From: Saccostrea echinata
Lineage: Eukaryota
Reading direction: 5' to 3'
Assembly: GCF_033153115.1 (NCBI RefSeq)
Contig: NW_026889761.1
Coordinates: 24,428,001-24,492,000, forward strand
DNA: 64,000 bases
Numbering within the stretch: position 1 is the stretch's first letter; each line of letters starts with the position of its first letter. This document shows, in pieces, positions 19,560 to 64,000 of the stretch. The translations under genes and the position numbers were made by a program. Below the pieces are notes generated by a model. It searched no databases. It was not told the origin of the DNA and worked only from the letters and a program-made list of their open reading frames with translations.

Positions 19560-20609
19560 ACACATTTTTTGGTTACCAAAAATATGGAGCAATGACCCAC
19601 TATACCTTAAAAATATACTTTTGTGACATAACATTCGCATCTTTTCGAGAAATACTGGAAGTCCATTAAGTCAAGGGTCATATCACAAACATGATTTAAA
19701 TGCCACTATTCATCACGACTTGTGTAGTCTAGTGGTTAGCGTGCTAGTCTCGAAAGAAAATAATACTTAGGATTTTTATTACTAGGGTTCGAACCCAGGA
19801 ATACCACATTGATTTTTTTAATAAAAGAATAAATTTTCCCGACAAAATTTTCCTCAGAAAAGTTTTGTTTATCATAATTTCATAAATTTCAATAATGAGA
19901 ACTTTACTCTAAATACTAAATTCACAAACTGAACATGATTTTTATATATCTGAAGCTATAGGCTTTCTGCACGCTATGTTAGCCCATCTCCTTTCTGACA
20001 CTGCACCGCAAGAGCTGTATTTAGTTGTACGAAGTATACAATTTATTGACAAGGTTTTTATAGTAATTTAAATTCTCTTTACGGAGACGAGAGGCATTCA
20101 TAGAACAATAGAAAAAAATCTCCATTAAAATCCTAAGATGTGGTCCATCGTCGCAAGTCACGGGTTTTGTATTTTTTTTTTCACAAACATTTGTTGAAAA
20201 AGAATGGTCACAAAACCCGTGGCTCGGCTTAAATTTGAAGATGGAGGTGGTAAAACGTTGCTATTTTTTTTTTTATCCGATTTGCATTCGATAAAATCAA
20301 GTTGTGTTGCAACTTTCACCCAATTCGAAATTAAAAACTAAAATTGAAATGTCGAATGGAAATCGTACATGAAAAGTTGCATCGAGTAATCGCACCATTA
20401 AGAGGATTTGGAACTCTTGCTATGATAAACAGACTTTTCACTGGGACGGAAATAATTTAGAAAAAAAAGTTTAACTGTAAACAGTTTGCTAGGCCAAATT
20501 ATGCCACGGTATATACAAAAACTGAAATTCATTACTCCTGCCTAAGCAGTTCAGGCTACAGGTACTGGTGGACAGGACTGGTGTCAATATATGACGCATA
20601 TTTTCATCC

Positions 20610-24700: not shown

Positions 24701-25457
24701 AGATTAACTTCAAATATAGTTTATGTTAACTTGATACTTGTAGAACAAATTACAATGGTCACTATAAAAGAGGTTTCAAATTCTCCACTAAAATCTGTCC
24801 TGGCATACTCTAGCTAATCTAAACATGCAAGATATACAAGGACAATCCAAGAAATCTGCATAATCTTCTACCCAACGACTGAAAAAAAAAATTATTCTGC
24901 AACTGGAAAGGACGTTTACAGTCCCTGTATTCCTGAAGGTCACAGTGACCTATATTTATGTTTTTGACCCACCTTCTTCAACATCAAATGATTTATAAAT
25001 CAATTATCTTTAGAATTAGTATACAGATCACTGCGCAGTATGAACAAATTTAACATTATTCGTAGGTAAGCATATTCTAAAGTTTGGTAGGTCATTTAAT
25101 GTAACCAATTCAATGAATGCAACAAAAAGCCTAATTTCCTTAAATGTATCAACAGTGCAAGATCAAAAAGACCTTGCTATAATAATCAATATGTGGCAAA
25201 ATAAACAGGTCATTGTGACCTACAATTAGGTATTATTATGCTTTCTGTAAGTTTATATTTGTACACACTATCCTCAAAATTCTTCACGAGACGCGGTCTT
25301 GAGTAGAAATGATCCAAAATAAAATAAATAAATAAAATAATCCAAAATGAGAAACAGCAATCATCAGAGAGCCAATTTTAGAAAGAGGTAAGTCATTGTG
25401 ACCTACTTTAGTGGTATATTATATCCTCCTTTTTGATATGGTTTGAATAAGTAGTAT

Positions 25458-25608
25458 GAACCCATGTCAGAAAGGCAACATATTCATGCTAACTAAAAAT
25501 TTTCAAGAACACATGAATTCCATAAAAACAATATAAGAATGCACACACCGTTTTAGCATCCAAGAAAATTTCAGTGCATAAACATGTTATCTCACTGGCC
25601 CAGGTTTC
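25458..25608 (-). ncRNA. Long hairpin H1 with loop motif AACGGUGUGUGC
   Basis: ~50-bp imperfect stem whose G-U pairs work only on the minus strand. Motif at 25541-25552. Confidence 0.7.
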
Positions 25609-26039
25609 TAATCCTTAATAATTTACATAATTTCCATAATGGAAACTGGCAATTAAGAAATTTGAGGGATATTTTTATGCTCTGTTTAATAAACACCAGA
25701 ATATACAGCATAAACCCATAGCAAATAACATCAACTACCTAACAGACCTCAAAGAAATGATGCTTATATAATCATGGCTTATATAGTTTTAAAGGTAGAA
25801 TCAATACTTCAACACTTATTCATAGAAATACTATAATGTATTCCCCTTGCTTCCCCATAACAAAACCCCTATCCTTCAATGCAGTGCAACAAATGCACAC
25901 AACAAATGCTCAACATGCAGTTACTTTTTTTTCAATGGCATGTACAGGTTTTGATTAAAGTATAAAGTGTTCCTTAATGTGGCAGGAAGCCTAAGCCCAT
26001 GCACTCTCCAAAAGGATGATATTGTTACATAGTACCCCA

Positions 26040-26315
26040 CATCCTCTCACAACCCCTCCCACCTGTCAAATCCCAATACTGGGTAGATCCTCTCACAACC
26101 CTTCCTACCATCCAAATCCCAACACTGGGTAGATCCTCTTGCAATCCCTCCCACCAGCCAAATCCCAATACTGGGTAGATCCTCTCATAACCCCTCCTAC
26201 CTCCAAATCCCAATACTTGGTAGATCCTCTTGCAACCCCTCCCACCATCCAAATCCCAATACTGGGTAGATCCTCTCACAAACCCCTCCCACCATCCAAA
26301 TCCCAATACTGGGTA
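26040..26315. repeat. 46-bp minisatellite, about 6 copies
   Basis: Unit tgggtagatcctctcacaacccctcccaccatccaaatcccaatac. Confidence 0.95.
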
Positions 26316-26408
26316 GCAATAGCAAGTTTTATAGGATTACATCTAGCCACCATATAATGTCAATACATGTACTTCCATTACTAAAATGTTACTTTCTTTT
26401 AACCTGAT

Positions 26409-26703
26409 TCTCGTGGCACGGTAGTTAGAGCATTTGGTCTAGAGTCATGGAATAAGGAGCTGATCCTTAAGAAACATGTTCAAATCCAAAAGTGGAATGT
26501 GGAGAATGGTCTTTTGAATGAGACCGTTTGAAGAGAGGTCTCGTGTTGTAGTAGGTGCTGGCAAGATAAAGATCAACCATCACTGCTCAGTGGCCCTGAT
26601 TGCCGAGTGTAGATATAAATTTGCAGCTCTCCACCAGCAAGCGGTGGTGTCTCAATATGAGTGAGAAATTCTTGAATGGATGTTAAACAGACAAACAAAC
26701 AAC
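26409..26703 (+). mobile_element. Same SINE family, diverged copy
   Basis: Head, core and (CAAA)n tail are recognisable. Confidence 0.8.
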
Positions 26704-27286
26704 ACTGATACTTGTTTAACAAATTACAATGGTCTCTTGTGTAAAGTAAATTAAATATCAGGACTATGCTTCATAAACCTGTATTTCTGAAGGTCACAGT
26801 GACCTACAGATTGGTTGTGTTACTGTGACTGTTCTCAACATCATGTGATTTGTAATTTTAATTATCCTAAGAATAGATCACTGCACTAGTAAAATGAACA
26901 AATTAAACATTATTCATAGGTAAGCCTAGGTAAGCATATTCTAAAGTGTGGTAGGTCATTAGGTAACAGATTCAATGAATGCAACAAAAACAAAAAACCT
27001 AATGTCCTCAAATGCAATCATTTTTCTGTCAAAGATCAATAAGGCCTTAATGGCATAATAAACAGGTCATTGTGACCTGAAATGAGGTAAATATACACAC
27101 TATCCCCAGGGTTCTCCTAAAAACAAGGTCCAATATCCAAGTCTTACAGTGGAAATAATATATAATCCAAAATGGGAAACAGCAATGATCGAGTCAATTC
27201 TAGAAAGAGGTAAGTCATTGTGACCTATACTTTAGGGGTATGTTATATCCTCTGAGGTTTGATATGGTATGAATAAGATCGTATCT

Positions 27287-27431
27287 GAACCCATGTCAGA
27301 AAGGCAACATATTCATGCTAACTAAAAATTTTCAAGAACACATCAATTCCATAAAAACAACAAGCACACACCGTTTCAGCATCCAAGAAAATCTCAGTGC
27401 ATAAACATGTCATCTCACTGACTTGGGCTTC
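27287..27431 (-). ncRNA. Long hairpin H2 with loop motif AACGGUGUGUGCUUG
   Basis: Paralog of H1. Motif at 27361-27375. Confidence 0.7.
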
Positions 27432-28370
27432 AACCATTAATAGTTTGCACAATTTTCACAGTGAAAACTGGCCTCCAAGAAGTGCATGATGCCAAATCAG
27501 GGCATACAGTTTAATGGCAGATTCAAAATAGTATGCTTGCACATATAAGCACCAGCTGGACTTGAAATGTGAGAACACAAAAGATGTTCAAATGAGACTG
27601 GTTTCTACCCAAACCAGCCATACTATTTTCTTGAATACATACAGCATAGTATCTGTACCAGCACCAGAGGTGCATGCATAGAGTTTGATAAGCTTAATAC
27701 CACATATGTACTGTAATGTAAACCCTTTGCCTTTCCCCAAACAGGAATAGAGTTGTGCACAAAGATCAACATCCCATCACCCAAATATTTATAATCAAAT
27801 ACATATGCTTAAAAATGACCCCCAAGCAATGGGACAAATGGGGACATTCAAAAACTCAACAGTTACTGGTGACCTTTTTATCTGTACTCCCTACTTAGAG
27901 GGCCTCATAATCATCTGCTTTTTTTTTTAACTTGCTGTTTTGGTGAGTATAGTTGCTCAGGGATTATAAGCCATCCCAACATTGGATAGCAATTTGCTGA
28001 GAATTCAGAAGCTACCTACAATACATCCAGGACACCCATACTTTTAAAAATAACTTCTGTAAACCTTAAGTCCTTACTGAATGAAATCCGTTCATACAGT
28101 GGATCTCACAGGAATGAAGATATGCTTCAATTTATGTACATGTACATTTTGGAGTCATTATGACTTATAATTAATTATGCTATAACACCATTGTCCTCAA
28201 CATTAAGTGACAAGGTCATTTACAGTAAGACTGACAAGTTAATTTACTAGATGACATGAAACAGCAATAAGAGCTAAACTTTTAAATGGATGCATGTGCA
28301 AGTCATTGTGACTTAATTTAAGGGTGAATCATGACCCCATGTTTTTTACTTCTATATGAAAAGGGAGTAT

Positions 28371-28516
28371 GAACCCAGGTCAGAAAGGCAACATATTCAT
28401 GCTAGCTAAAAATTTTCAAGGACACAAACTCAAATTCACAAAATAATATGCACACACCGTTTTAGCATCCAAGAAAATTTCAGCACACAAACATGTTACC
28501 TCACTGACTCAGGTTT
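28371..28516 (-). ncRNA. Long hairpin H3 with loop motif AACGGUGUGUGC
   Basis: Paralog of H1 with a compensatory A-U to G-C change (GCUGAAA/UUUUAGC). Motif at 28450-28461. Confidence 0.7.
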
Positions 28517-43021: not shown

Positions 43022-44478
43022 CTTCTGTAGGATTAAGTGCTGCTTGTCCCTGCTTCTGTAGGATTAAGTTCTGCTTGTCCCTGCTTTTGTAGGATTATGG
43101 TACTGCTTGTCCCGGCTTCTGTAGGATTATGGTACTGCTTGTCCCTGCTTCTGTAAGATTAAATACTGCTTGTCCCTGCATCTGTAAGATAAAATACTGC
43201 TTGCCCCTGCTTCTGTAAGGTTGGCTACTGCTTGTCCCTGCATCTGCAAGACTAAATACTGCTTGTCCCTGCATTTGTAAGATTGAATAATACTTGTCCC
43301 TGCATCTGTAAGATTAAATATTTCTTGTCCCTGCTTCTGTGAGATAAAATACTTCTTGTCCCTACTTCTGTAAGATTAAATACTGATTGTCCATGCATCT
43401 GTAAGATTGGCTACTGCTTGTCCCTGCTTCTGTAAGATTGGCTACTGCTTGCCCCTGCATCTGAAAGATTGGATGTTGCTTGCCCCCTGCATCTGAAAGA
43501 TTGGCTACTGCTTGTCCCTGTATCTGTAGGATTAAATACTGATTGTCCATGCATCTGTAAGATTGGTTACTGCTTGTCCATGCATCTGTAAGATTGGTTA
43601 CTGCTTGTCCCTGCATCTGTAAGATTAAATACTGCTTGTCCATGCATCTGTAAGATAAAATACTGCTTGTCCCTGGTTCTGTAAGGTTGGCTACTGCTTG
43701 TCCCTGCATCTATAAGATTAAATACTACTTGTCTCTGCATTTGTAAGATTAAATTATGCTTGTCCCTGCATCTGTAGGATTAAATACTGCTTGTCCCTGC
43801 ATTTGTAAGATTAATTACTGCTTGTCCCTGCATCTATAAGATTAAATACTGCTTGTCTCTGCATTTGTAAGATTAAATACTGCTTGTCCCTGCATCTGTA
43901 GGATTAAATACTGCTTGTCCCTGCATCTGTAAGATTAATTACTGCTTGCCCCTGCTTCTGTAAGGTTGGCTACTGCTTGCCCCTGCATCTGAAAGATTGG
44001 TTATTGCCTGTCCATGCATCTGTAAGATTAAATACTGCTTGTCCATGCATCTGTAGGATTAAATACTGCTTGTCCCTGCTTCTGTAAGGTTGGCTGCTGC
44101 TTGCCCCTGCATCTGAAACATTGGCTATTGCTTGTCCATGCATCTGTAAGATTAAATACTGCTTGTCCATGCATCTGTAGGATTAAATACTGCTTGTCCC
44201 TGCATCTGTAAGATTAATTACTGCTTGTCCCTGCTTCTGTAAGGTTGGCTGCTGCTTGCCCCTGCATCTGAAACATTGGCTACTGCTTGTCCCTGCATCT
44301 GTAAGATTAAATACTGCTTGTCCCTGCTTCTGTAAGATTAAATACTGCTTGTCCCTGCTTCCATAGAATTGGGTGCTGCTTGTCTTTGCATCTGTAAGAT
44401 AAAATACTGCTTGTCCCTGCATCTGTAAGATAAAATACTGCTTGTTCCTGCTTCTGTAGCATTAAATACTGCTTGTCC
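43022..44478. repeat. 31-bp minisatellite, about 47 copies, running into an assembly gap
   Basis: Unit ctgtaagattaaatactgcttgtccctgcat, with ggctac variants. Confidence 0.95.
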
Positions 44479-45719: not shown

Positions 45720-46551
45720 TGATCATTGTCATGGCGGGCCCTAAATATTGAAAACAAAACCACTTACTTTACATCTACGTCTGGACAGAGATGCTGAGGT
45801 GAGGCGAGGGTTGTGGTGGATGTACAAACAGATGTGTGTGCAGATGAGACAGTCAAACATTAACTTAACAATATTGAAAACAATAAACATTGGAATTCAC
45901 ACGCTGAACAATATACAAATACATGGAAAATACAAAAAAAAATGCACTTATCAAAAAGGACATATACCAAAAATTGTAGAACACAGTACAATATATGCTA
46001 TAATTCAAATACTGCATAGAGGATTCTTTTTTATGAAAAAAAGAAAGCACCTAAATCTTATCTTTCTCCTGATCACATCTAAAATGTAGGTTAAATGCAG
46101 CATTCAATGACTATGCAGCAGATGCAACATTGTAAGTGGCAGCATGAGAGCCAGGAGACTATGCCAAAAATAGGCAATGTAGGTCAGATGCAGCATCCAA
46201 AGTAAGAATCAAAGTCAGCATCCAAAGATATACGATAAAGAACAAGATCAGTTTGGAACTAAATCTAAATAATGAAAACAATCTGAGCCAATTAATCAAG
46301 AATGTAAGTCAGACGCAGCATCAGAGAAAGCATCTATAGAAGCATCAAGTGCAAATTTGGTTTAATTACTGCTTGTGAGAAGCTGAGGATAAGTCTAAAT
46401 CATAAGTTCATTAACCCAAGTAACTAAAGCATAAAAATACAGTTCATATGCATTAGCAAAGATATGCATCAAATGAACGGTTGATATGGTCTCAGAATGA
46501 GACAGACAGACAGACATAGTGATAATAATATTATACATCAATACATTAATA

Positions 46552-46898
46552 CAGTAAAACTCGGTTTTAGCGAAGTTCTGGGGACCTGCGAATTTACTTC
46601 ACTATATCCATAATTTGTTATATCCGTATAACAAAGTATTTAAAGTATACAAAACGAGTTCGCAATACAGATTTTTTTCATTTAAGTATGTTTACCAAAT
46701 GTATTTAACTTCCAGGAGACACAAAATCAGTTCATTATAACCGTAAATTTGCTATATCCGAGTTCGTTATATTTGTACAATTTAAGAAGAAATTGTTATG
46801 AATTTCGCCGGGAATTAAAAAAAAAAATGCTATATCCGTAAATTCATTATATTGGATATAATGAATTTATCCGTGTTTGTACTAAACGAGTTTAACTG
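46552..46898. mobile_element. pogo/Tigger-like MITE
   Basis: TA-CAGTAAAACTCG ... CGAGTTTAACTG-TA. Confidence 0.8.
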
Positions 46899-48078
46899 TA
46901 CTAGTGTTGAACAACATGGAAACTTTCAAAATTTATCATCACTTATAATCAGTAGCTTTAAATTGATCAAGGATACAAATTGTCAGAGCTTTCAAAAAAA
47001 AATTCATGGCTAGCAGATGCCGTGTCAGGAAATTGAAGGTACGGTTTGTGTCCAATTTGTTTTGGGGAAAAAATGAACAAAACAATGCATACAGAAATGT
47101 TCATTATGCAAAGCACACTACATTTCATTTTCTCAGCAATGGAATTCATAAAATTCCTAAAGAAAGATTTGAATCGGTAAGCGTATGTCGATGGTCAACC
47201 AATTATCAGTGACAATCTTTTCATTACTTATCATAACTTAATACATTGAATAAATCAACCACGAAGTATAATTAAACAAATAGTTATACCTCAGAGAAGG
47301 AACCTATAATTAAAGATAAGTAAATAAATAGTGAAAAGAAATGGATCCCCACCTTCAAACATATAAACATTAAACTTTTACAGTAATCTTACTCCTAATG
47401 GAAAGATTTTATAAGGGAAATTTGATTACGAAATTTATTTCCTGAAATTGATACTGTTGTTTTAGACTGTATTTACAGAGAGAAGAAAAATGTCCTTTTT
47501 ATTTTTACAAAAATGAACCTCTGAGCTTACTGACAAATTACAGTAAACAGTAATGGGGTGGAAAACTGAAATTACCCATGTATTTACCGATTACAAAGTA
47601 CTAATAATTACTTCAATCTTAGAAAAATAAATAATAAAGTGAAATAATCTCAGTAAAGCAATAAATAATCAAATTTTAAATTTTAACTGAGCTCGCACAA
47701 TCTTGGGGATAAGAAAGGGAAATTTATAAGCTATGAATTATTTATGAAGTTTAGAATACAGGAAATCCATGAGATATACAAATTCACACAAACGCAATAC
47801 TATAATATATCTATATATACATTACAAATCAATAAAATTTTAACTTTAACATTGATCACAGACACATCAGGGACATCTCAAGGTCATAACTAAAAATTAC
47901 AGGTAAATGAATTAAAGGTAAATTAATGGAAATTACACACATCACAGTAGTAAGCCTAAATTAATAGTTTAATGTCTAATTCATATCCCCAAAAATTATT
48001 TTTGAAAATAAAGAAATATTAAATTGAGAACAAATTAGAAATTAGATTTGAATAATTAATGTAACAAATTTAAATTAC

Positions 48079-48149
48079 TCTCATGAATGCAGTGGCTAAA
48101 TAACGGTGTGTGCTTGAGTTGAGGTATTTAACCACTAGCCTTCATGAGA
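48079..48149 (-). ncRNA. Hairpin K1 with loop motif GCACACACCGU(U)
   Basis: + strand tctcatgaa..agtggctaaata[22-nt loop]tatttaaccact..ttcatgaga. One C/A mismatch becomes G-U on the minus strand. Confidence 0.65.
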
Positions 48150-48505
48150 AAATCGGAGAGAGAAAGGGGCTTCATTTTATCTTAATAATCAATTTAAGTA
48201 TTAAATCTAAAAATTTTACAAAGGACTGAAATAAAAAAAGGTAAAATCAGAATACTTGACTTTAGTCTAATTATAAAACAGAGGAAAGAAGATAAGTTCT
48301 AACAATACGTTCTAATTAACCAAAATATTCAAGGGACAAAGGATTTATAAAGGATCCTTGAGATGCCCCCCCAAAATATACAATGTATTTATACTACAAT
48401 GTAACCTAGATCTTCAAAAATATTTCCATGTGTTTAAAAAAATTAGCTTTTACTTCCTAAAAAGTAATCCCAATTACAACTATAGCATCCAAATTACAAC
48501 TATAG

Positions 48506-48735
48506 CAGGGGTTCGAATCCCACTGTGGGACGTGGAGACTGGTCCTTCAGATGAGACCGTATAAACTGAGGTCCCATGTCACAGAAGGTGTTGGCACAGA
48601 AAAGGCCCCTCACTGCTCAAAGGCCCTAAGTGCCAATCAAGTATAGGTCAAAATTTGTAGCTCTCCACCAGCAAGTGGTGGCGTCTCCATATGAGTGAAA
48701 AATTCTCGAGGGATGTTAAACAATAAACAAACAAC
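48506..48735 (+). mobile_element. 5'-truncated copy of the same SINE
   Basis: Starts at the B box. ACAACTATAGCA on both flanks is a probable TSD. Confidence 0.8.
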
Positions 48736-49476
48736 TATAGCAACTATAGCAGACCCGTGGAAAGGGGGGGGTTAGAAAAGATTATAAGTCCTACTTCATA
48801 AACCAAATAAATACTTAGGTTTACAATCAACAAGACCTATCTGAGACATACATAAAATGAATGCACAGTACAAATACAAAATATCAAACAAAATACTGAA
48901 CCCATCATGCACACACAGGAAGTAATGAAAATGGAAAAGTGGAAAAGAAACCCTCTTTACAATGAAAGCTCTAGATTTTACTTCTTTTCAATAATTTAAT
49001 GATTTCAATTTCTCTTTAGTGAAAATTTGAATAACTTTAACTTTAAAACCTGAAAAATTGAAATTGATGGAAAATAAATTTAACCCTATTTATCGATGAA
49101 AACAAGAAAGAAGGAATTAACACTTAGTCTTAAGAAATGAATATAAGCTTTTATTATAACTTTAATTAATGTCAATGCCTGTATGATGGTGATACTAAGG
49201 TCAACTTTAAATGAACACAAAATCCAAAGGGAGATTGTAAAAATTAACTAAACCATTCAGTTTAACTTGATCAGTCAACTTATTTTAGTTGTAGAAAAAT
49301 TTAATCACTAGTTATTGTAATTTAGGAAAATTCATAATTTAATTAACCTCTTGTTTAATTTTTCCTAAGTTTTTAATTTTATTTTAGTTTTAGATTTGAT
49401 TAAAATTAAAGAACAGGAGGAAAATGAAGCCCTTGGCACTATTTATTAACTAAATTAAACCTTAACATTTAGTTAC

Positions 49477-49547
49477 TCTCCTGAATAACTACATCTAAAT
49501 AACGGTGTGTGCTTTCATTGAGATATTTAGATGTAGTAACCAGGAGA
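49477..49547 (-). ncRNA. Hairpin K2 with loop motif GCACACACCGU(U)
   Basis: + strand tctcctg..actacatctaaata[22-nt loop]tatttagatgtagt..caggaga. Same geometry as K1 with different stem sequence. Confidence 0.65.
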
Positions 49548-49897
49548 AAATAAGGACAAATTTAAACTTATTTAAACTCAATATGGTCTTACAAAATTAG
49601 AATTTAAAAAAAGGGGGGTATATTTATGTTATTAACAAAAAGTTAATAATTCCTGAATTATTTATGTCTGAATGATATTGTGTATTGAGATTCCTAGATG
49701 GAAATTACAATATGACTTAGGAGAAAATCTAACTCAAATCTTACTCAAGTTTTATCCTTTAGATATTGAAATGAAAGGAGAAAATTTAATAATATTTATA
49801 GTGAAAAATTTAGGAAATTTAGGAAAAAAAATTACTCTTACTTAAATATAAACATTAGTTTTATACCTAACAGACTGAAGGGAAAGGGGGAGATTAT

Positions 49898-50443
49898 TTA
49901 AAAAGAGGTGAGAATAGGGAAAAGAATACCAGTTACTAAAGAGACATCCACATTCCTAAACAAATGCTGCACCAATTCTCCTCCTAATGCTGCAAAGCCT
50001 CGCCTCACAGGTTCCCTCATGGGTGATGGCTGTTCAGGAGGGATCTCTGTCATCGGTGACCCAAGGCTAGAAAGCCGAGGATGACCCTCAACAACCTGGG
50101 AAGACGGCAGTTCCATCTCCTCAGTCTGCCCAGCCTCCTCCTCCACTGGAACCTGAGCAGGCTGAGGAGATGGCAGCGCCACCTCCACGGTCTGGTCAAG
50201 TTCTAGCCAAGGAAGGGCTATGACTGGCTGAGGGGACGGCAGACTCACTTCCTCAGGCTGAACAAGCTCTAGCTCAGGAGCTGCTATCACAGACTGGGGA
50301 GATGACACAGCCACCTCTACAGTCTGCTCAAGCTTCTCCTGAGATAGATCCTCTACAGCCTCAGGGAGTGGCAGTGCCGCCTTCTCAGGCTGCTGAAGAG
50401 CATCATCAACCTTCACCATCGGCTTCACCCTGGACCTTCGCAC
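49898..50443 (-). CDS. Putative coding exon 2: acidic E/P/Q/S-rich low-complexity protein with ~22-aa internal repeats
   Basis: 181 open codons, GC well above background, pyrimidine tract plus AG directly before GTG 50443. Repeats such as QTVEVAVSSPQSVIAAPELEL / QPEEVSLPSPQPVIALPWLEL. Confidence 0.7.
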   Translation of the reverse strand: MRRSRVKPMVKVDDALQQPEKAALPLPEAVEDLSQEKLEQTVEVAVSSPQSVIAAPELELVQPEEVSLPSPQPVIALPWLELDQTVEVALPSPQPAQVPVEEEAGQTEEMELPSSQVVEGHPRLSSLGSPMTEIPPEQPSPMREPVRRGFAALGGELVQHLFRNVDVSLVTGILFPILTSF

Positions 50444-50664
50444 CTTAAAAGATAAAAAAGATCATATCAAAAACAAGAATAGAAATGATAAATATATATA
50501 TATAACTAACCAGAAGTCTCATCCACAAAGAAGTCTGGTCACACGAAAAACACATGTGCAATATAGAAGCACCAACTGTTCAAAAGCTATAGCCAATGCT
50601 AAAGTTTGGTCAAAGAAACTGGGGATAAGCCGAGCCATAGGCCTACATAACAACAGATAAAAAC

Positions 50665-52620
50665 ACAGGTAATCAGAGATTACAGAGCTCACCTCAACGA
50701 ATGTTGTCTTTAAGTAAGGCAAAGTCCCACACTAAGCTAATAATCTAGTAGTGTGCATCCCTAGATGCAACATTTATGCAAGTTTGGTCTGATAAGGCTT
50801 GCAGTTACTTGGGATTAATGGACTTATCTAAAAAAAATTTAAGCTAGTCACTCTTCCAGAAAATGCAAGTTAAACCCAGCATCTAAAGTAATTTGAGAGT
50901 GTTCATCCCTTGATACATCCATGCAAGTTTAGTTCAGATAGGCCTTATGAGACTTGCTGTAAAAACTTTACACTGGTCACTCATCTGGAAAATTAGATCA
51001 GATTCAGCATCCGAAGCAAGTCCAGTAGTGTGCATCCTTAGATGTATCATCCAATGCAAGTCTGGTCAATAGGGCATATTGTTACAATGTACTTGGAAAT
51101 GAGATCTGCTCCAAAAACTTTAACCTGTTCACTCATCAGGAAAATGTAGGTCAGATCCAGCATTCAATAAGCAAGCCTGGTAGTGAACATTCTTAGATGT
51201 ATCATCCATGCAAGTTTGGTCAATATAGGGCTTATAGTTACTTTGAAATGAGACTTGCACAAAGAACTTTAACCTGAACCAAAAACATTAACATGGTCAT
51301 TCTTTAGCTGAAATTGCAGCATCTGAAACCTTGACTGGTACAATGAAACACACTAGTAGAATTTTCTATGCACCTCTGATTAATGCATGGCGTAGAAGTG
51401 CTTAAAAAGAAAACTGCACCAAAACTTTAATCTGGGACGAGGGTATAACATAAGCTCCCCCCTCCCAACTTTGTTTAGGTGAGCTAAAAATGTTTGAAAT
51501 AGACAACATTATTTTTACATGCTGTTTGGGATTACTTACACATATCTAGAACAAGTGTCTGAATGGTAGTAGTTTGTAGTTAGTTTTGTTAGAATAGAAG
51601 GATTGATATAATATAATTTTGAAGATCAATTCCTGCAAAATCCCAATATTCCGCCTATCACAAGGACGTTGCACCAATAGATTTTGCATTGTTTCCATAC
51701 CTGATCACTTAACTGCATAGAGAGTGCTTTTTCAGATCTCACAAATATCCAATATGTCACAAAAGGCATTTATTTTAAATAAGTAAAATGTCTTTCTAAA
51801 GTAATTTGTCAAATCCAGCATCTGGAGCAAGTTTGAGAGCGTTCATCCCTTGATGCATCATCCCTGCAAGTTTGATTCAGATAGACCTTATAGTTACTTG
51901 AAAACGAGATCTGCTCCAAAAACTTTAACCTGGTCACTCATTTGGAAAATATAGGTCAGATCCAGCATCTGAAGCAAGTTTAGTAGTGTGCATCCTTAGA
52001 TGTATCATCCATGCAAGTTTGGTCAATATAGGGCTTATGGTTACTTGGAAATGAGATCTGCTCCAAAAACTTTAACTTGGTCACTCATTCAGAAAATATA
52101 GGTCAGATACAGCATCTGAAGCATTCGTTTAGTAGTGTGCATCCTTAGATGTATCATCCATGCAAGTTTGGTCAACATAGGACATTAAGTTACTTGGAAA
52201 TGAAATCTGCTCCAAAAGCTTTCATCTGGTCACTCATCCAGAAATTTTGTAGATCAAATCTAGCATATCTGAAGCAAATTCAGTAGTGTGCATCCTTAGA
52301 TGTATCATCCATGCAAGTTTGGTCAATATAGGGCCTATAGTTACTTGGAGAAAAGACCTGCTTCAAAAAGTTTAACCTGCTCCAAAAAGTTTAACCTGCT
52401 CCAAAAACATTAACATGGTCATTCCTTAGCTGAAATTGCAGCATCTGAAACCTTGACTGGTACAAGGACATATCTTAAGCATCCTCCATGCATCTCTGAT
52501 TAATATAGGGCATAGAAGTACTTGAAAAGAAAACTGCTCCAAAAGCTTTAATCTGGGATGCTGACACCGACGCTGAGGGTATTACATAAGCTTCCCCAAC
52601 TTCGTTGAGGTGAGCTAAAA
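50665..52620 (-). mobile_element. HINE-like elements with ~150-bp internal tandem repeats
   Basis: aggtgagctaaaa ends at about 51490 and 52620; inverted agctcacctcaacg at about 50687; tandem units gatgtatcatccatgcaagtttgg... Confidence 0.75.
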
Positions 52621-54482: not shown

Positions 54483-55711
54483 GCCATATATATAGCTTCC
54501 TGGTGTAAGAGAGATATATAAAATTACTCATTACTTCTGTTTTGCCTACACTCAGTATCTAGCATTTTTATGTTTTGTATTGCTGTATGTTAATGTGTTT
54601 TCTTGTCCTTTTGAGTGTTTACAAATCATACTTACCCTACTTGTATCTCAAGGTGGCTGCAATAATGTAGCCCTCTCTAATTTTTTTTGGGGGGGGGGGG
54701 GGGGGGAAGGGGCCACAACTCCTTAGGATCTCTGTAATGGTGCAAGTGCGGGAGTGAATCACTCCCGCACTAATTTCGGCTCAAATTTTCAGTAAGTGGC
54801 TATTTTATTAATGTATCTTACCTGAACTCATAAAATGTAGTTAAGCAAGACATGAATTGATCCAAAAATATACAGAACAATCCATATATCGGTTATTTTT
54901 TGTGTATGTCAACATCAAAACTTGAATTTACCCTGGTATCCACCATGTTTACTCACCTGTTGATCGATTTTATTTTGGAACAACCAATGAGAATTCAGGA
55001 TCTAGGGAGCGTATCTTTTAGGATGTCCCTTAATTTAAACATAAATATCGCTGTGTATGAAAAAAAATATCACATGGAATGCTTTTATTTATCAATGGTT
55101 AGTGATACCATACAACACAAAAATTTATCAACAACAACATTTACTTTATCAAGTGATTCTACTTTCAAATGCAAGTCTCAGTACATCATGTGAGAACTGT
55201 CATGGCTGCTGAGGAGAACAACTGGTAAACAAGCAGATTTATTTTACATGGTTTTTGCGTATAAAGGGCTATGTTGTTGACAGTGATTAACATTTCCGTC
55301 TTATTGGAAGTAAGTTGTATGTAAAAAAAATTTTTGCCTGCAGTCGGCCGTATCTAAAAAATATATTTGCACCATTACGGAGATGCAGTGGAATTGTAGC
55401 CCTCTCCTGAAAATATCAGATATAAAAAAAAGGACTACATTATTGCAGCTAGTATCTATGTTATGTCCCCAAAGGGACCATGAATGGCAAATAATTACCA
55501 TTCTATTCTATTCAAAGTCCAGTCCAGAGGAATTACAGAGAGAGTGGGATATAACAACAAAATTCTATCTTGCCATAAAAAGTTTAAAGTATAATTAAAT
55601 TTATTCAGAGAGGGAGATGTAAATCAAATAGCACTCTAATCCCCTCCCTCTTCCCCTTTCCTTCTTAAATAACATTTGTTACAAGTGAATCTTTTATAAC
55701 TTATCACTTAC

Positions 55712-55783
55712 AGGAAAGTCCACGACGTAGTCACTGAACCACCGGGGGCGCTGTCGAATTCTTGTAGATCGTCTTGGCTCCAT
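55712..55783 (-). CDS. Putative coding exon 1 of an unknown ~205-aa protein (MEPRRSTRIRQRPRWFSDYVVDFP)
   Basis: GC-rich island. Acceptor ttattatag just upstream (exon starts 55790), ATG at 55783, phase-0 donor CCT|GTAAGT that matches the phase of the 50443 exon. Confidence 0.6.
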
Positions 55784-59850: not shown

Positions 59851-62800
59851 GGCTAATTGTATTTGGCGCATCGGCGCGCTCGCGCAATAGATTTTGTTTA
59901 TTAAATAAATTATCGCTTATACAATTCTGTTAGCATCGGGCGCGATATCATAAATAATCAAAGTACTGAGAAAAACAGAGAGCCGGGCCCATTTACATAT
60001 GTACAGAGAAGTGAACAAGACCGTTTTACATGAAACATACATTGTAATTACAGATGAATAACAACTAGACACTGGAAGAATATGTAACACATAAAAATAT
60101 ATTTATGGTATATAGTATGAATAAAAAATGTTTAAGAAAAAATTAAATAAAATGCAGTTTGAATTTAACAGCGTAAACAATTTATCACATGCATCGTTTT
60201 GGGGTCTAACATCGCTTACAGAAGTAAATAAACATTGATGCAGCAAGGTCAAACATTTATACACAGACGGGTCCTTAGCGGGGAGTTTTGCATAAAGGTG
60301 TGCATCGGGTCACGTGCTCCCCGCATTAGTGTTAGCCTGGTAACAGAACCTTTATTTATAGAATGTGAAGCTGGCAGACTTGATGAAATTACCTTTCGCA
60401 TTTTTTAGACAAATAATTCATTGAAGAAAAGGGGAGAAAGAGTATTACCATTATTTTCTTTTCTTTTTTTTTTTTTTTTTTTTTGGAGAATTTTTTAGTT
60501 AACTTAAATTTGTTTAATTAAGTGTTTGTATTGCTTCAAAGGTGGTTGAGCATACGTACTATATTCTTACTCGTATTTAATTTGGCGGTGAGGAAGCAGC
60601 ATTTCCGGTTGAACACCGTAACATAAGCCGGCTATTGCTATACGAGCAATGAGCCCGGCTAAAAAGAGAAAGTTTCATAGATGGAATTATGTTTTTGAAG
60701 CTTCAACATCATTATTTAACTGCCTGTGGTTTCTTTTATTCATGGCCACTAATTAAGGTACTCCGATCCTCAGGTTCTGAAATTCAACTTTTAAGTAATT
60801 GAAATTGCTCACAAAAATGTCTCTGATTTCACATAGTAACGTGAATTTACCCATGGAATTTCTTCAAAGTTCATCATTATAGTTAATCATATCATATAGG
60901 GAAAATTATGAAATCTTAAACATATTTTCAAGAAATGCGAATAAAAACACCAGCTATGCATTTTCTAATTGAAAATTGATCAACAAATATAATTTAGGAT
61001 AGGAAAATATAGGTATCCAGGCATTTGGAGAAAATTGCATCATTTTTATGCTTATACAGTATTTTAATTCTTCTTTTTACTTCAATCGTCATATAATACA
61101 TAGTGTAAAAAGCTTGTGCTATCATTGCTAGACATCAAATATCACATCTAATTTCATATTATACTAATAAGCAATCGTATCTAATGCTAGACTAAAGGAA
61201 ATTCGATTTCTCTAAAAATGAATTTATTTTTTTTTTCTTTTATGGGATACAGATGTCAACTTTTTACAATATCGTTTCTAAGACTTCAAAGAACCTTGAA
61301 ACATATTAAGATGCATAAAATGAAAATTGTTGCACGAAAAGATCTTAATTTCAAGCTTCATTTTGAGACTTTTTAAATAAAATAATGAATTTAAGAGTTA
61401 TCCTTCCTGGCTGAGGATTGGATATCCTTAATACAGTAAATACACTGGTTTTATCAATTTTCATTGGCATCAATTTTTGTGCAATCAGCGAATGACTCAG
61501 TATTTCGTGAACACAGGTCATTATAAAACTTTTTGATATGCTTCTTACTCTAATGACCATCAAATTCTATTTTAATTTTCACTCTGCAAAACACAAAACC
61601 ACAAAAATTAATGTTTAAAGAATGTTGATGGAACCATTGTACATGTATTTTATATGACTGGATTTTTAATGAGATAAATGGTTGAGAAGACTACAATATG
61701 GAGGCAGGACTTTATGTATACTGGCACATGATCTGTAGTGCAAATGATCTGTTTAGGTTTACAGGCCAGTCATTTCTGTAACTAAAGTTACCCCCCCTCC
61801 TGAAATAAAGACAAGTTAATTTTTAATAGTAGTATTATTTTAATACGTAACAAGGAATCTTTGTCAAACACTGATACCAATCAAGTCTCTAAAAAGGGGG
61901 TTAAACTCTAGAGTCTAGGGTCATTACGTAATACCGGTAAATTTTTGTGATACATAATGATATATATATATACGAAGGTTGTCAAAAAGTTCGTGGACAA
62001 ATGCTTAAATTTCTTTATAAAGTCCGCAATGGCAAACATGTATGATAATATCTTAATATAGACCATGATTGAGTAAATATACAAAAATTAAACAATGCAC
62101 ACTATTTACTGAACATTATAGGTGTAAATACTTTGTATATGCAAGTTGCACGGGCCAGTCTGACGTAACGCTTATTTCATGACAACGTCAGAAATATGAA
62201 TTTTGGATTTTTATCGCATGTTCATAGACGCACGCTATTTTTCTTTATTATGCCACATTGCCAAATGTGTGCAATAAAATTTATGTATAGATTAATTATA
62301 ATTAATTTAAATTTTAAAATTCAAAACAATACACAATAATTTACGAGCGTCATCAATATGAACACTTCGTAAACACAGGATGCACAGCCCAGCCCAACGG
62401 CGTTATATTTATAACAACGTCATGAATAGGAATATATCCTATTTTCATCAAATAACAGTGGTTTTCCACTTCTTGTATGTCTCCAGAATTTTACACACCG
62501 TTGAAAAATCGTTTTCACCAATTACAAATCACTAGACTAAATATTTTCCAATAAATTTAAGTTGTTTGAATAAATATTTTGTTTTTGATGACGTTTCAAC
62601 CATATTAACCATAATTGTATGATTGGACGCTGTCCCGTTAGGATGGCCGACGTCGCTTTTTCTGTCAATTTTTGAAACATACTTCTTGCGGTTTTCACTT
62701 AATATTTTCATTGTCTATTTAGTAAGCGATACTAAAGGTATCAGAAAATGGCGATAACCGTTTTATTTGTGATATATTAAATTTTTATTCAGCTTTGACT

Positions 62801-63042
62801 CGTTTTAAAAAGAAAATGATCATTTCAATCAGATCACTTTATTTAAAAGTTCATGGCATTTTAACCCTGGTCAGTGCGCACTATCGGCGACCTTTTTACA
62901 AAAATATAACGTTCAAACAATAAAAATCAAACTATTCTGACTTGGATTTTCATAACTAATATTTTGGTATACAATAAGCATATCTTGAACCATTCATTTT
63001 GACAAAAACGCCCTTGTCCACGAACTGTTTGGACAACCCTTG

Positions 63043-63078
<36 letters not shown>

Positions 63079-63452
63079 TATTGAAAGTAGGCCAACTCAA
63101 AAAATTGGGGTAAAATTCGGATTACTCTAGCACAAATTGTGGTAAGGCATGCAAGGATCAAAGGGGATCCAGATCCAAACTGACATAGAAAAATTACTAA
63201 AGCTATGCCTCGGACCTCTTTCCCTTGCGATTTGAGCCAACACCTCCTAGGGAAAAATTTCTGGATCCACCCAACAAAAAATTACAATCGGGCTCGGGCT
63301 GTCGACTTGAATATAAGCGATAATGCTTAAATTATTGAGAAAATCGATGTCATTTGAGTGTTTTAATGCAAGGAGAAAATACTTATGTGATATTAGGATG
63401 AGATGGACGAGATGGACGCGCTGGCGCGCCGACGCGCCGAATACAATTAGCC
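59851..63452. mobile_element. 3.6-kb non-autonomous TIR transposon with 8-bp TSD inside the Crypton ORF
   Basis: TIR GGCTAATTGTATTTGGCGCATCGGCGCGC vs GCGCGCCGACGCGCCGAATACAATTAGCC. TSD GTTTATAC at 59843-59850 and 63453-63460. Excision restores the reading frame. Confidence 0.9.
61973..63042. mobile_element. Mariner-like MITE inserted in a (TA)n tract, nested in the 3.6-kb element
   Basis: Imperfect TIRs CGAAGGTTGTCAAAAAGTTCGTGGACAA / TTGTCCACGAACTGTTTGGACAACCCTTG, with TA runs on both sides. Confidence 0.8.
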
Positions 63453-64000
63453 GTTTATACTAATCATTGCATCAGGGCCACGTGTATTACCTTACTTGAC
63501 GAGAGTGGATATGAGGGTAGACACATCATCGGAATATCTAAACATAAGTCAGAGACGAGTCTTAAGCATTATTCTTCACATCTCAGTGAAAATAAGATCC
63601 ATGGCATGTCCAACGCTTTGTCCGAAAAAATTCTTCCCCAGACTGTGACCGTCACCGAGAAAACAACACTCACTGAGCAGACAACTTCGGAAGAATCTGT
63701 GTTAAGTTTGAGTGACCTTGATTTATTAGAAATACCAATGCTGCCTACAAACCTCAATTCCCCATATGAGAAAAATGCGCAAAAACAAGACTTTAATTCG
63801 TGCAACTTCAACCAGTGTACCATTGTCTTTAACAAATACACAAACTTAATTAGTTTCATTATGTGTTCATAATTCTGAGTACTTTTTTTCACCTGTTTAA
63901 AATAAAGTTTAATGGCAAGTAAATTGTGCTTTATTTATTAAATATGTTGTAATAAAAAGTGAAAGGTATAACAAAACATTTATTGACTAGTTTCTCAGGC

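What the first reader, a model, noticed from the sequence alone, without database searches (positions are those of the whole stretch)
48079..49547. K1/K2: same hairpin geometry, rewritten stems
Both have a 22-nt loop (CUCAA...AAGCACACACCGU on minus) closed by AAAUA/UAUUU pairs. The adjoining stem differs completely (agtgg/ccact vs actacat/atgtagt) and the outer stem covaries (cat/atg vs cct/agg). This is the signature of selection on structure. They lie just downstream of the ORF stop, in a U-rich 3' UTR or intron.
Basis: seen in the sequence. Interest (0 to 1): 0.78.

Follow-up and report, generated by a model that had tools for sequence, protein, structure and literature searches.

The report
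Oyster gene-linked hairpins with fixed loop
Two small hairpins behind an oyster gene belong to a large family that keeps one short loop sequence unchanged while its stems are rewritten in paired fashion, which points to an unrecognised RNA signal tied to a lineage-specific gene family.

Summary
K1 (48066-48159) and K2 (49464-49557), read on the minus strand, are about 75-nt hairpins with a shared 20-22-nt loop and different but paired stems.

They belong to a family. A covariance model finds 148 matches in this genome, probably Saccostrea echinata. That is a lower bound. I saw seven stem types, all keeping CACACACC in the loop.

- **Structure:** 97.7% of pair cells are standard pairs, against 35-47% with slid partners. 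Five pairs changed on both sides, and eight once types E and F are added. There are 124 G.U cells against 5 A.C.
- **Conservation:** between subfamilies the hairpin is 85.6% identical. Its flanks are 34-49% and the coding exon about 80%.
- **Linkage:** all 28 close paralogs of the 181-aa exon have K hairpins 168-926 nt behind it on the same strand. So do a 43% and a 45% copy.
- **Partner:** the exact complement of the loop core sits in the apical loop of about 150-nt H hairpins, 11-57 kb further down the same strand, at 28 of 28 loci.

Best reading: a selected sense-strand RNA element that presents its loop. Pairing with H is inferred. No transcript evidence or cross-species test was possible. 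The 12-mer also lies in an abundant transposon palindrome.

The parts
49464..49557 (-). K2 hairpin (stem type B): 22 consensus pairs and a 22-nt apical loop. It is the first hairpin after the ORF stop.
   Evidence: Model R1 scores 108.2 bits on the minus strand. Fold -28.5 kcal/mol, z -5.54. Alignment A2 and its consensus structure.
48066..48159 (-). K1 hairpin (stem type A), with the same loop and architecture but a different stem.
   Evidence: Model R1 scores 97.5 bits on the minus strand. Fold -28.9 kcal/mol, z -6.18..
49501..49512 (-). Invariant loop core of K2, GCACACACCGUU on the minus strand (AACGGTGTGTGC on the plus strand).
   Evidence: Position follows from the 18-mer match. Exact in 43 of 46 distinct copies read from alignment A2. 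Part of the pattern with 98 genome matches and 0 control matches.
48102..48113 (-). Invariant loop core of K1, GCACACACCGUU on the minus strand.
49898..50443 (-). 181-aa Pro/Glu-rich coding exon (exon 2, stop included) of a Saccostrea-specific gene family. The K hairpins are linked to it.
   Evidence: ORF listed, with acceptor ttttaag|GTG read. There are 28 intact paralogs in the genome at E <= 1.3e-45. Five annotated Saccostrea proteins match. No Pfam family.
55694..55783 (-). Probable exon 1 of the same gene, starting MEPRRSTRIRQRPRWFSDYVVDFP. The exon's end inside this ORF was not mapped.
   Evidence: ORF. The same N-terminus is joined to exon-2 sequence in the annotated proteins P0001-P0004.
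28368..28515 (-). H3: about 150-nt hairpin whose apical loop begins UAAAACGGUGUGUGCAU, the complement of the K loop core.
   Evidence: Fold -59.2 kcal/mol, z -9.88 on the minus strand. Consensus of 42 pairs with the motif unpaired.
27278..27425 (-). H2: the same hairpin family, with loop motif GAAACGGUGUGUGCUU. This is 14 nt complementary to the AAGCACACACCGUU of K1 and K2.
   Evidence: (-42.9 kcal/mol, z -3.50).
25455..25602 (-). H1: the same hairpin family.
   Evidence: Minus strand -45.3 kcal/mol, z -4.84; plus strand -20.1, z -0.86..

Best explanation
K1 and K2 are two members of a family of RNA hairpins read in the direction of the neighbouring gene, the window's minus strand. The stem is a scaffold: its sequence is free as long as it pairs. 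The working part is the apical loop, whose 3' half is invariant: GCACACACCGUU in the types found here, CACACACC in all seven types.

One to fourteen such hairpins follow, within a few hundred bases, the stop codon of every checked member of a Saccostrea-specific gene family. That family encodes an Arg-rich N-terminus followed by a Pro/Glu-rich protein. The hairpins therefore most likely act in cis on that transcript, in its 3' UTR or a downstream intron, as a repeated recognition site.

In the 28 closely related loci, the likeliest partner is the exactly complementary sequence shown in the apical loop of the H hairpins further down the same strand. That would be a loop-loop (kissing) contact, either within one long transcript or between transcripts.

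Shown: the hairpins, their family, the paired stem changes, the invariant loop, the linkage to the ORF, and the complementarity with H. Inferred: that the elements are transcribed, that they lie in the mRNA, and that K and H actually pair.
For: **Structure kept while sequence changes.**
- 97.7% of 1012 cells are paired against 35-47% with slid partners, and 5 pairs changed on both sides.
- With types E and F added, 96.0% are paired and 8 of 22 pairs changed on both sides.
- A seventh type also folds, with a 12-nt loop.

**Strand.**
- 124 G.U cells against 5 A.C cells.
- Mean fold energy is -27.0 sense against -23.9 antisense, and sense is lower in 31 of 46 copies.
- Sense is lower in 6 of 6 type-G copies.

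**Constraint.**
- Type B against type D: hairpin 85.6% identical, 60-nt flanks 48%, far flanks 34-40%, coding exon 79.5-81.6%.
- Within the AB subfamily, the K1 and K2 bins score 0.93, equal to the best ORF bins. The upstream intron scores 0.42-0.51.
- Between the window and the E or F array units, only the hairpin aligns, plus the ORF for the F locus.
- Types A and B keep different stems inside one locus but share the loop. Homogenisation of whole copies therefore does not explain the pattern.

**Linkage to the ORF.**
- At 28 of 28 ORF paralogs the first K lies 168-926 nt beyond the ORF match on the same strand; 24 of the 28 lie within 168-400 nt. I computed this by hand.
- A 152-aa copy on C46 (43% identity) is followed after about 400 nt by 14 hairpins.
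- A 148-aa copy at 45% identity is followed after 242 nt by six hairpins 205 nt apart.

**Not scattered.** All 98 matches to the loop pattern lie in these loci or in arrays; the control gave 0.

**Partner.**
- The complement of the loop core occurs on the same strand only inside H1-H3 in this window.
- It sits in the unpaired apical loop of a 42-pair consensus hairpin that has many fixed G.U pairs.
- 35 of 38 H copies read keep it exactly.
- H clusters lie at 28 of 28 ORF loci on the ORF strand.
Against: **No transcript evidence.** The only runs found are small sets of contigs of uncertain kind. They do not show K2 and hardly show K1.

**No cross-species test.** The metagenome scan gave only chance matches: 0 of 17 stretches hold a K hairpin.

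**Few independent events.** The double changes separate a handful of old stem types, so independent events number roughly a dozen at most. The pair-count shuffle control was reached in 365 of 500 shuffles for A2 and 11 of 500 for A4.

**A DNA hairpin fits the strand signal too.** G.T is also tolerated in single-stranded DNA hairpins. Earlier scan notes report rolling-circle-type transposons in this genome whose hairpins stay paired while drifting.

**Motif shared with a transposon.** The same 12-mer has 539 genome matches against 18 control matches. Many lie in both arms of an abundant ~170-bp palindrome.

**Weak points for K-H pairing specifically.**
- There is no compensating change between partners. 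Both A/U variants of the flanking position coexist within loci.
- The E and F loop variants have no compensated partner on the sense strand.
- The E, F and G arrays have no H cluster in the 26-mer scan, and one H cluster on C20 has no K or ORF.
- K and H share about 20 of 21 letters in opposite orientation. The complementarity may simply be inherited from an inverted duplication.

**Arrays without a nearby ORF.** Long E-type arrays (2-3.3 kb units, up to 13 copies) have no ORF match nearby among those scored.
Confidence: 0.45

Rival explanations
1. The hairpins are sites for a sequence-specific RNA-binding protein, possibly the Arg-rich product of the linked ORF itself. The protein would read CACACACC in a loop held open by any stem. 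This is like the repeated iron-responsive elements of the transferrin-receptor 3' UTR. No RNA partner is needed, and the H complementarity is a by-product of common descent.
For: The feature common to all seven stem types is the short loop core, including arrays at loci with no H cluster. Copy number behind the ORF varies from 1 to 14, as expected for additive binding sites. The ORF begins with an arginine-rich stretch. That such stretches can bind RNA hairpins is recalled knowledge, not tested here.
Against: It does not explain why H keeps exactly the complementary 12 letters unchanged in its own apical loop at 28 of 28 loci. No RNA-binding domain was found: Pfam and Atlas searches were blank. 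No binding data exist.
Confidence: 0.2
2. The hairpins are single-stranded-DNA structures of old rolling-circle (Helitron2/Helentron-like) or similar mobile DNA. The kb-sized tandem units would be head-to-tail copies. Pairing and loop would have been kept by selection for transposition, and the linkage to the ORF reflects a gene carried along or a repeatedly duplicated block.
For: The 12-mer is enriched 30-fold in the genome. It lies in both arms of an abundant perfect palindrome next to a conserved repeat flank. Earlier scan notes describe Helentron-like elements here whose ~160-nt hairpins stay paired while drifting (not re-tested by me). There are tandem arrays of 2-3.3 kb units at 11 or more places without a nearby ORF match. 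Homology to the two nearest paralogs ends sharply at the same point, window ~20966. G.T pairs are possible in DNA hairpins.
Against: K hairpins are never found as scattered single insertions: 98 of 98 pattern matches lie in the paralogous loci or arrays. They keep the same position and order (A then B, or C then D) across paralogs whose flanks no longer align. Nothing but the 12-mer is shared with the palindrome. The window has no long ORF for a transposition protein. After duplication as part of a host block, a relic hairpin should decay like its flanks, and it does not.
Confidence: 0.2
3. The hairpins are precursors of small RNAs (microRNA-like or siRNA-like) hosted downstream of the ORF, as in tandem microRNA clusters.
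For: They are tandem hairpins better kept than their spacers. Type E has a near-perfect 24-bp stem. Weak sub-threshold similarity of E hairpins to generic microRNA models, 26.8-26.9 bits against gathering scores of 80-92. An earlier scan note reports a real tandem microRNA array elsewhere in this genome.
Against: The conservation pattern is the reverse of a microRNA: the loop is invariant and the arms are rewritten. The stem has 22 consensus pairs, shorter than the roughly 33-35 bp of a canonical primary microRNA (a recalled figure). No Rfam family reaches threshold on K or H. No small-RNA data are available.
Confidence: 0.07
4. There is no function. The palindromes would be renewed by template switching or gene conversion inside a young, repeatedly duplicated block.
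For: Many copies are recent duplicates, 94-99% identical, so raw copy counts overstate the support. Replication template switching can create paired changes without selection (recalled knowledge).
Against: The hairpin survives between loci whose ORFs are only 43-45% identical and whose flanks are unalignable. G.U pairs persist, although template switching would make perfect pairs. Stems differ between positions within a locus while the loop stays fixed.
Confidence: 0.08

Closest known systems
Repeated iron-responsive elements in the transferrin-receptor 3' UTR, and similar protein-binding 3' UTR stem-loops such as Smaug recognition elements (recalled knowledge, no call)
   Same: Several hairpins in one 3' region share a loop sequence while their stems differ but pair. 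The stem acts as a scaffold and the loop is what is read.
   Different: The K loop is 12-22 nt rather than 5-6 nt. There is no sequence or structural homology and no known binding protein. UTR location is not shown. K also occurs in long kb-spaced arrays.
Kissing-loop RNA contacts: HIV-1 dimerisation site, and the bicoid and oskar 3' UTR dimerisation loops (recalled knowledge, no call)
   Same: Complementary sequences are displayed in the apical loops of stable hairpins.
   Different: The known cases use short, mostly self-complementary loops to dimerise identical RNAs. Here a 12-14-nt non-palindromic sequence is shared between two different hairpin families 11-57 kb apart on one strand, each in 2-6 copies per locus. 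No physical evidence exists.
Terminal hairpins of Helitron2/Helentron-like rolling-circle transposons, reported for this genome by earlier scan notes s1-816116 and s1-817763. The ~170-bp palindrome seen here in L084-L090 may be one of them.
   Same: These hairpins keep pairing while their sequence drifts and form tandem arrays. One exact 12-mer is shared.
   Different: K is not dispersed. Its loop, not only its pairing, is conserved. It always follows the same ORF. Nothing else is shared with the palindrome.
Tandem microRNA precursor clusters
   Same: Arrays of hairpins that are better conserved than the spacers between them.
   Different: In K the loop is more conserved than the arms, the stem is shorter, and there is no Rfam match.
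Docking-site / selector-sequence pairing in arthropod genes with tandem exon arrays, for example Dscam (recalled knowledge, no call)
   Same: Complementary intronic elements on one strand flank a stretch holding repeated exon-like units with minus-strand splice signals.
   Different: There is no evidence that K, the exon-like repeats and H share a transcript. The elements sit in hairpin loops. Several copies lie on both sides rather than one docking site.

Membership tests
microRNA precursor | Arms (the mature sequence) are conserved more than the terminal loop | tested here: not met
   The loop core is exact in 43 of 46 distinct copies, while 5-8 stem pairs changed on both sides between types.
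microRNA precursor | Stem of about three helical turns including a lower stem (recalled figure of about 33-35 bp) | tested here: not met
   22 consensus pairs, about 27-29 bp including wobble extensions.
microRNA precursor | Discrete small RNAs from the arms | not testable with these tools
   No small-RNA run was available. The only runs found are contigs of uncertain kind.
Any Rfam family | Score at or above the family's gathering threshold | tested here: not met
   0 matches at gathering threshold over the whole window. Nothing at K or H at E <= 1.
Helitron2/Helentron-type terminal hairpin | High-copy element inserted at many unrelated places | tested here: not met
   98 of 98 loop-pattern matches and the 148 model matches lie in the ORF-linked loci or in tandem arrays.
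Helitron2/Helentron-type terminal hairpin | Hairpin close to a defined element end, with short terminal inverted repeats and a target-site signature | tested here: inconclusive
   Conservation between B and D units stops about 40 nt 3' of the hairpin, which could be an end. I did not define ends, inverted repeats or target sites.
Helitron2/Helentron-type terminal hairpin | An autonomous partner encoding Rep-helicase | not tested
   The window has only 3 ORFs of 130 aa or more, and I did not scan them for a transposition protein. The genome was not searched for a partner.
Kissing-loop RNA pair | Complementary sequences lie in the unpaired loops of two hairpins | tested here: met
   K loop GCACACACCGUU and H loop AACGGUGUGUGC are both unpaired in the consensus structures.
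Kissing-loop RNA pair | Compensating changes between the two partners | tested here: not met
   The core is invariant in both. The flanking A/U variants do not track each other by locus. The E and F loop variants have no compensated partner.
Kissing-loop RNA pair | Both partners are present as RNA and associate physically | not testable with these tools
   Needs RNA-seq, proximity ligation or in-vitro binding.
Protein-binding 3' UTR stem-loop array (IRE-like) | Several hairpins with a shared loop and varying paired stems in the 3' UTR of one mRNA | tested here: inconclusive
   The hairpin pattern is met. Position 168-926 nt behind the stop fits. The 3' end of the mRNA is unknown, and a conserved GUAAGU at about 45768 hints at further splicing.
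Protein-binding 3' UTR stem-loop array (IRE-like) | A cognate binding protein | not testable with these tools
   None identified. The linked ORF has no recognised domain.
C/D or H/ACA snoRNA | Box C/D or H/ACA motifs in the standard arrangement | tested here: not met
   None seen on reading K on either strand. No snoRNA model matches K or H.

The most novel reading that the evidence does not exclude
K and H form a multivalent RNA-RNA recognition system encoded in a nuclear gene family. Two to four K loops and two to six H loops per locus, repeated at 28 loci, would pair through an invariant 12-14-nt sequence. Pairing could act in cis, looping out 11-57 kb that holds repeated exon-like units and so steering splicing, circularisation or 3'-end choice. 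It could also act in trans, networking the transcripts of all loci into one assembly. Because the same 12-mer sits in an abundant transposon palindrome, the system might also sense or titrate that element's nucleic acid.
Probability: 0.2. Interest if true: 0.85.

Novelty: new variant of a known kind. Interest (0 to 1): 0.6.

Why it matters
If the reading is right, oysters of this genus carry an unannotated class of structured RNA signal that has been kept longer than the coding sequence beside it. The signal is a hairpin whose only fixed part is a short loop, repeated one to fourteen times behind every member of an orphan gene family.

That offers a clean natural experiment on stem-as-scaffold, loop-as-message evolution. 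It also gives a handle on the function of a gene family with no recognisable domain.

In 28 loci it provides a testable candidate for programmed loop-loop pairing between two hairpin families in an animal nuclear genome. Such pairing is so far known mainly from viruses and a few localised mRNAs.

If the transposon reading wins instead, it would show that structures of mobile-DNA type can be retained at fixed positions in a host gene family.

Tried and rejected
- **Rfam:** nothing at K or H. The weak microRNA-model hits at 50102-50184 and 29207-29316 are generic palindromes.
- **microRNA, snoRNA and SECIS readings:** rejected on the conservation pattern and missing boxes. AUGA occurs on the 5' arm only in type A.
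- **Hammerhead or other ribozyme:** no core motifs seen by eye and no Rfam hit.
- **Splice-signal reading of the conserved 3' flank** (GUAACUAA...AG|UUGAUAAAU): noted but not established, and type C lacks the GU.
- **RNA evidence:** Laying them showed even low cover in X1, which looks like DNA. X2 and X3 showed cover only at repeats, the ORF exon, 46.3-47.0 kb and faintly the K1 bin. This is not usable for transcript ends. One join, 46145 to 50661, has no splice-type ends, and I set it aside.
- **Cross-species test:** The metagenome scan of an 18-mer gave 17 stretches, none a K hairpin; the best scored 16.7 bits, E 0.82.
- **Whole-hairpin duplex energies of K with H:** uninformative. Shuffled H gave a mean of -34.8 and a best of -45.3, against observed -41.7 to -52.5. 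I rely on the exact complementarity instead.
- **Locus-wise covariation between K and H variants:** none.
- **Compensated partners for the E and F loops:** none.
- **Homology of K with the transposon palindrome beyond the 12-mer:** none.
- **Protein function:** Pfam and the ESM Atlas were blank.
- **Literature:** three searches were seen as listings only: Saccostrea + microRNA; Saccostrea echinata + genome; oyster + hairpin + tandem + conserved loop. I read passages of PMC6201952, which has 0 occurrences of hairpin, Helitron, MITE or palindrom-. None of this mentions such an element. Supplementary files were not consulted. These searches are narrow, so they do not prove the element is absent from print.
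- **Masked N stretches** at about 44.47-44.9 kb were left alone.
Full report
**What is there.** At 48079-48150 and 49475-49547 the window holds two hairpins of about 75 nt. On the + strand they share CTAAATAACGGTGTGTGCTT, then TTGAG.TATTTA, and the outer TTACTCTC.TGAAT / GAGAAAAT. The inner stem is wholly different, and the outer stem differs at a position where both sides change.

As minus-strand RNA they fold at -28.9 and -28.5 kcal/mol, with z -6.2 and -5.5 and 0 of 200 shuffles as good. The shared 18-mer occurs twice in the window against 0.05 expected.

**Setting.** Both hairpins lie downstream, on the minus strand, of a 181-aa Pro/Glu-rich ORF at 49898-50443. The ORF starts at a good acceptor, ttttaag|GTG. 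Its only database relatives are five Saccostrea proteins of 211-242 aa.

- Four S. cucullata models begin MEPRRSTRVRQRPRWF.DYVVDFP and then continue with this exon to the same stop.
- A matching first exon lies at 55694-55783.
- One relative is an S. echinata protein on a contig of 54,306,292 bases, the length of contig C9 of the window's assembly. The genome is therefore very probably S. echinata.
- The protein has no Pfam family and no usable Atlas neighbour.

**A family, not a pair.** The 18-mer at up to 1 mismatch has 61 genome matches against 1 control match. They fall in clusters of 2-4 copies in one orientation, 0.8-1.8 kb apart.

- Four stem types appear in fixed order. Reading along the + strand pattern, this is A then B in one subfamily of loci and C, D, D(D) in another.
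- A covariance model built from 46 distinct copies finds 148 matches in the genome. Only 150 of about 674,100 first-look candidates were scored, so this is a lower bound.
- Type E forms tandem arrays of 2-3.3 kb units, up to 13 copies, at 11 or more places.
- Type F is 14 copies on contig C46.
- A seventh type, G, came from a further locus.
- A pattern requiring only the closing pairs and GCACACACC has 98 matches against 0 control. All 98 lie in these loci or arrays.
- Type G has a shorter 12-nt loop, UUUUCACACACC. The letters common to all seven types are therefore CACACACC.

**Is the structure selected?**

- RNAalifold gives 22 pairs. Five of them have sequences in which both sides changed and the pair is kept.
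- On that structure 97.7% of 1012 cells are standard pairs. Column shuffles give 91.2% (0 of 500 reach it) and slid partners give 35-47%.
- The number of pairs with double changes is itself not above the shuffles (365 of 500 reach it). The signal lies in how many sequences carry the changes, and these are inherited, not independent.
- With E and F added, 16 distinct rows give 96.0% paired and 8 of 22 pairs with double changes; 11 of 500 shuffles reach that. That alignment was fitted to the model and so leans towards it.
- One position runs through A-U, G.U, G-C and C-G across types.

G.U cells number 124 and A.C cells 5. By my own reading of the per-pair table, this is about 13 events against about 4, and all the old, fixed ones are G.U. 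Sense folds are on average 3 kcal/mol better, and lower in 31 of 46 copies. They are lower in 6 of 6 type-G copies. F is a tie and E differs by 2 kcal/mol. The asymmetry favours a single-stranded form of the gene's sense strand: RNA, or in principle one DNA strand.

**Constraint relative to neighbours.**

- Between the two subfamilies, only the ORF exon and the hairpins still align by blastn.
- Comparing all B with all D units, the hairpin is 85.6% identical, the adjoining 60 nt 48%, and the farther flanks 34-40%. Gaps were counted as mismatches, which lowers the flank values. The ORF exon is 79.5-81.6% identical at the nucleotide level in seven loci.
- About 40 nt 3' of the hairpin (GUAACUAA..AGUUGAUAAAU) is also shared by B and D.
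- Within the AB subfamily (16 sequences) the 50-nt bins holding K1 and K2 score 0.93, the same as the best ORF bins. The intron upstream of the exon scores 0.42-0.51 and the region behind the stop 0.6-0.88.
- Between the window and E or F units, nothing but the hairpin aligns (74-77 nt, 76%), plus the ORF for the F locus.
- A and B keep different stems inside each locus yet share the loop. Wholesale conversion between copies therefore cannot explain the fixed loop.

**Linkage to the ORF.** The exon has 28 intact paralogs at E <= 1.3e-45, with 62-99% identity.

- At all 28, model matches lie on the ORF's strand. The first begins 168-926 nt beyond the ORF match, and 24 of the 28 fall within 168-400 nt. 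I computed this by hand.
- On C46 an intact 152-aa copy (43% identity) is followed after about 400 nt by the 14 F hairpins.
- At C9:302850-304800 an intact 148-aa copy is followed after 242 nt by six hairpins 205 nt apart. It is one of ten copies at 44-46% identity.

The order ORF then hairpin array is thus older than almost all alignable sequence in these loci.

**The complementary partner.** Searching the window for the complement of the loop core gave three further matches, all on the minus strand, at 25539-25549, 27362-27372 and 28448-28458.

- They lie in three hairpins of about 150 nt, H1-H3. These fold at -45 to -59 kcal/mol on the minus strand, but at -20 kcal/mol (z -0.9) on the plus strand for the one tested.
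- A 29-sequence alignment gives 42 pairs, ten or so of them fixed G.U. The apical loop begins UAAAACGGUGUGUGC[A/U]U and is unpaired.
- Of 38 H copies read, 35 keep AACGGUGUGUGC exactly.
- The H-specific 26-mer at up to 3 mismatches has 97 matches against 0 control. They form clusters of 2-6 at all 28 ORF loci, on the ORF's strand, 11-57 kb downstream. One more cluster on C20 has no ORF or K match.
- K (GCACACACCGUU) and H (AACGGUGUGUGC) are thus perfectly complementary over 12 invariant letters. This is 14 for K1/K2 with H2, and up to 19 with one bulge if the top of the K stem opens.
I came to it before seeing that note.

**Limits of the pairing idea.**

- The two variants of the flanking letter (AAGC or AUGC in K; GCUU or GCAU in H) coexist within loci and do not track each other.
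- The E and F loop variants have no compensated partner on the sense strand.
- E, F and G arrays have no H cluster in the 26-mer scan.
- K read on the + strand and H read on the minus strand share about 20 of 21 letters (GCTAAA(T)AACGGTGTGTGC.T). The complementarity probably arose by an inverted duplication.
- What still needs explaining is why exactly these letters stay fixed in both loops.

**A transposon connection.**

- The 12-mer has 539 genome matches against 18 control matches.
- Many are inverted pairs 36-61 nt apart. In 5 of 7 places fetched, they are the two arms of a perfect ~170-bp palindrome that abuts a conserved repeat flank. The other two places have one exact copy.
- Earlier notes of this scan describe abundant Helentron-like rolling-circle elements in this genome whose ~160-nt end hairpins stay paired while drifting (s1-816116, s1-817763). 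I did not verify that classification.
- Apart from the 12-mer, K, E and F units share nothing with these palindromes, and the window holds no such palindrome.
- This raises a real rival: K-type hairpins could be structures of mobile single-stranded DNA.
- Against it stand the lack of scattered copies, the fixed positions behind one ORF through deep divergence, and the continued constraint after the loci separated.

**Extent of the locus.**

- Homology to the two nearest paralogs (94-98% identical) ends at the same point, window ~20966.
- It runs upstream past the window's end. It is interrupted only by a 3.6-kb high-copy insertion at 59851-63453 that the paralogs lack.
- The recently duplicated block is therefore more than 43 kb.
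- Between K and H lie a 31-bp minisatellite and 0.58-0.67-kb repeats with minus-strand splice-like signals.
- A conserved island at 45744-45793 ends in GUAAGU on the minus strand.
- Whether these belong to the same transcript as the ORF is unknown.

**What could not be done.**

- The one run search found three small contig sets of uncertain kind. Laid on 46000-51900, they give no transcript ends.
- One X3 contig aligns up to 50443 and then carries 89 letters that do not match locally. This fits splicing at the exon's acceptor.
- A metagenome scan gave only chance matches.
- Three literature searches (listings only) and passages of one paper turned up nothing on such an element. Supplementary files were not consulted.

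**Verdict.** The feature is real and is the visible tip of a genome-wide family. I put about 0.7 on it being a selected single-stranded structure of the sense strand. I put about 0.5 on it acting as RNA in cis on the ORF's transcript, and about 0.3 on K-H loop pairing being its mode of action in the 28 loci. The stated best explanation, a loop-presenting cis RNA element with H as likely partner, gets 0.45.

It is not a member of any catalogued RNA family. In kind it resembles repeated loop-defined 3' UTR hairpins, with an unusual long invariant loop and a built-in complementary partner.

Noticed in passing
L084-L090 (for example G000:C1:9301440-9301900): An abundant ~170-bp perfect palindrome carries AACGGTGTGTGC in both arms and abuts a conserved repeat flank on one side. 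The 12-mer has 539 genome matches against 18 control matches. It is probably one of the Helentron-like end hairpins reported by earlier scan notes.
   Followed up: partly
G000: C23, C56, C60, C51, C73, C12, C9, C28, C54, C1 (coordinates): On ten contigs a 44-46% copy of the ORF lies 268-352 kb from an E-type hairpin array. Most lie within about 1 Mb of a contig end. This suggests one very large block duplicated onto many chromosome ends.
   Followed up: no
window 25455-28515: The H hairpins are more uniform than the coding exon. The 26-mer TTCTTGGATGCTAAAACGGTGTGTGC is exact in 52 of 97 matches across both subfamilies. About ten stem positions are fixed G.U pairs.
   Followed up: partly
G000:C20:1014193-1020595: A cluster of five H-type matches has no ORF or K match among those scored.
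   Followed up: no
window 48490-48710: An insertion between K1 and K2 carries a tRNA-like GGTTCGAATCC motif. It is missing from most paralogs (conservation 0.36-0.58) and has very high contig depth in all three runs. It is probably a SINE.
   Followed up: no
window 59851-63453: A 3.6-kb stretch of high-copy repeats interrupts homology that is continuous in the C9 and C28 paralogs.
   Followed up: no
window ~20966: Homology to both nearest paralogs ends at the same base. A 0.74-kb repeat at about 19253-19994 has dozens of 96-97% identical copies.
   Followed up: no
window 50102-50184: An inverted repeat inside the coding exon gives weak hits to microRNA models on both strands (31.3 and 28.7 bits against a gathering score of 100). 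This explains why the protein search also matches the opposite strand of paralogs.
   Followed up: no
window 45744-45793 (minus strand): A conserved island (0.90 within the AB subfamily) ends in AAA|GUAAGU. This may be the donor site of a further exon downstream of K1.
   Followed up: partly
window 25385-25400 and the matching place after H2: The minus strand reads ACTTACCT just after H1 and H2. The plus strand therefore carries a perfect AG|GTAAGT donor-like site there.
   Followed up: no
window 43018-44478: A 31-bp minisatellite of about 47 copies runs into the masked N stretch. The N stretch was left alone.
   Followed up: no
window 50443: One contig of run X3 aligns up to the exon's acceptor and carries 89 further letters that do not match locally. 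This is consistent with a spliced upstream exon.
   Followed up: no
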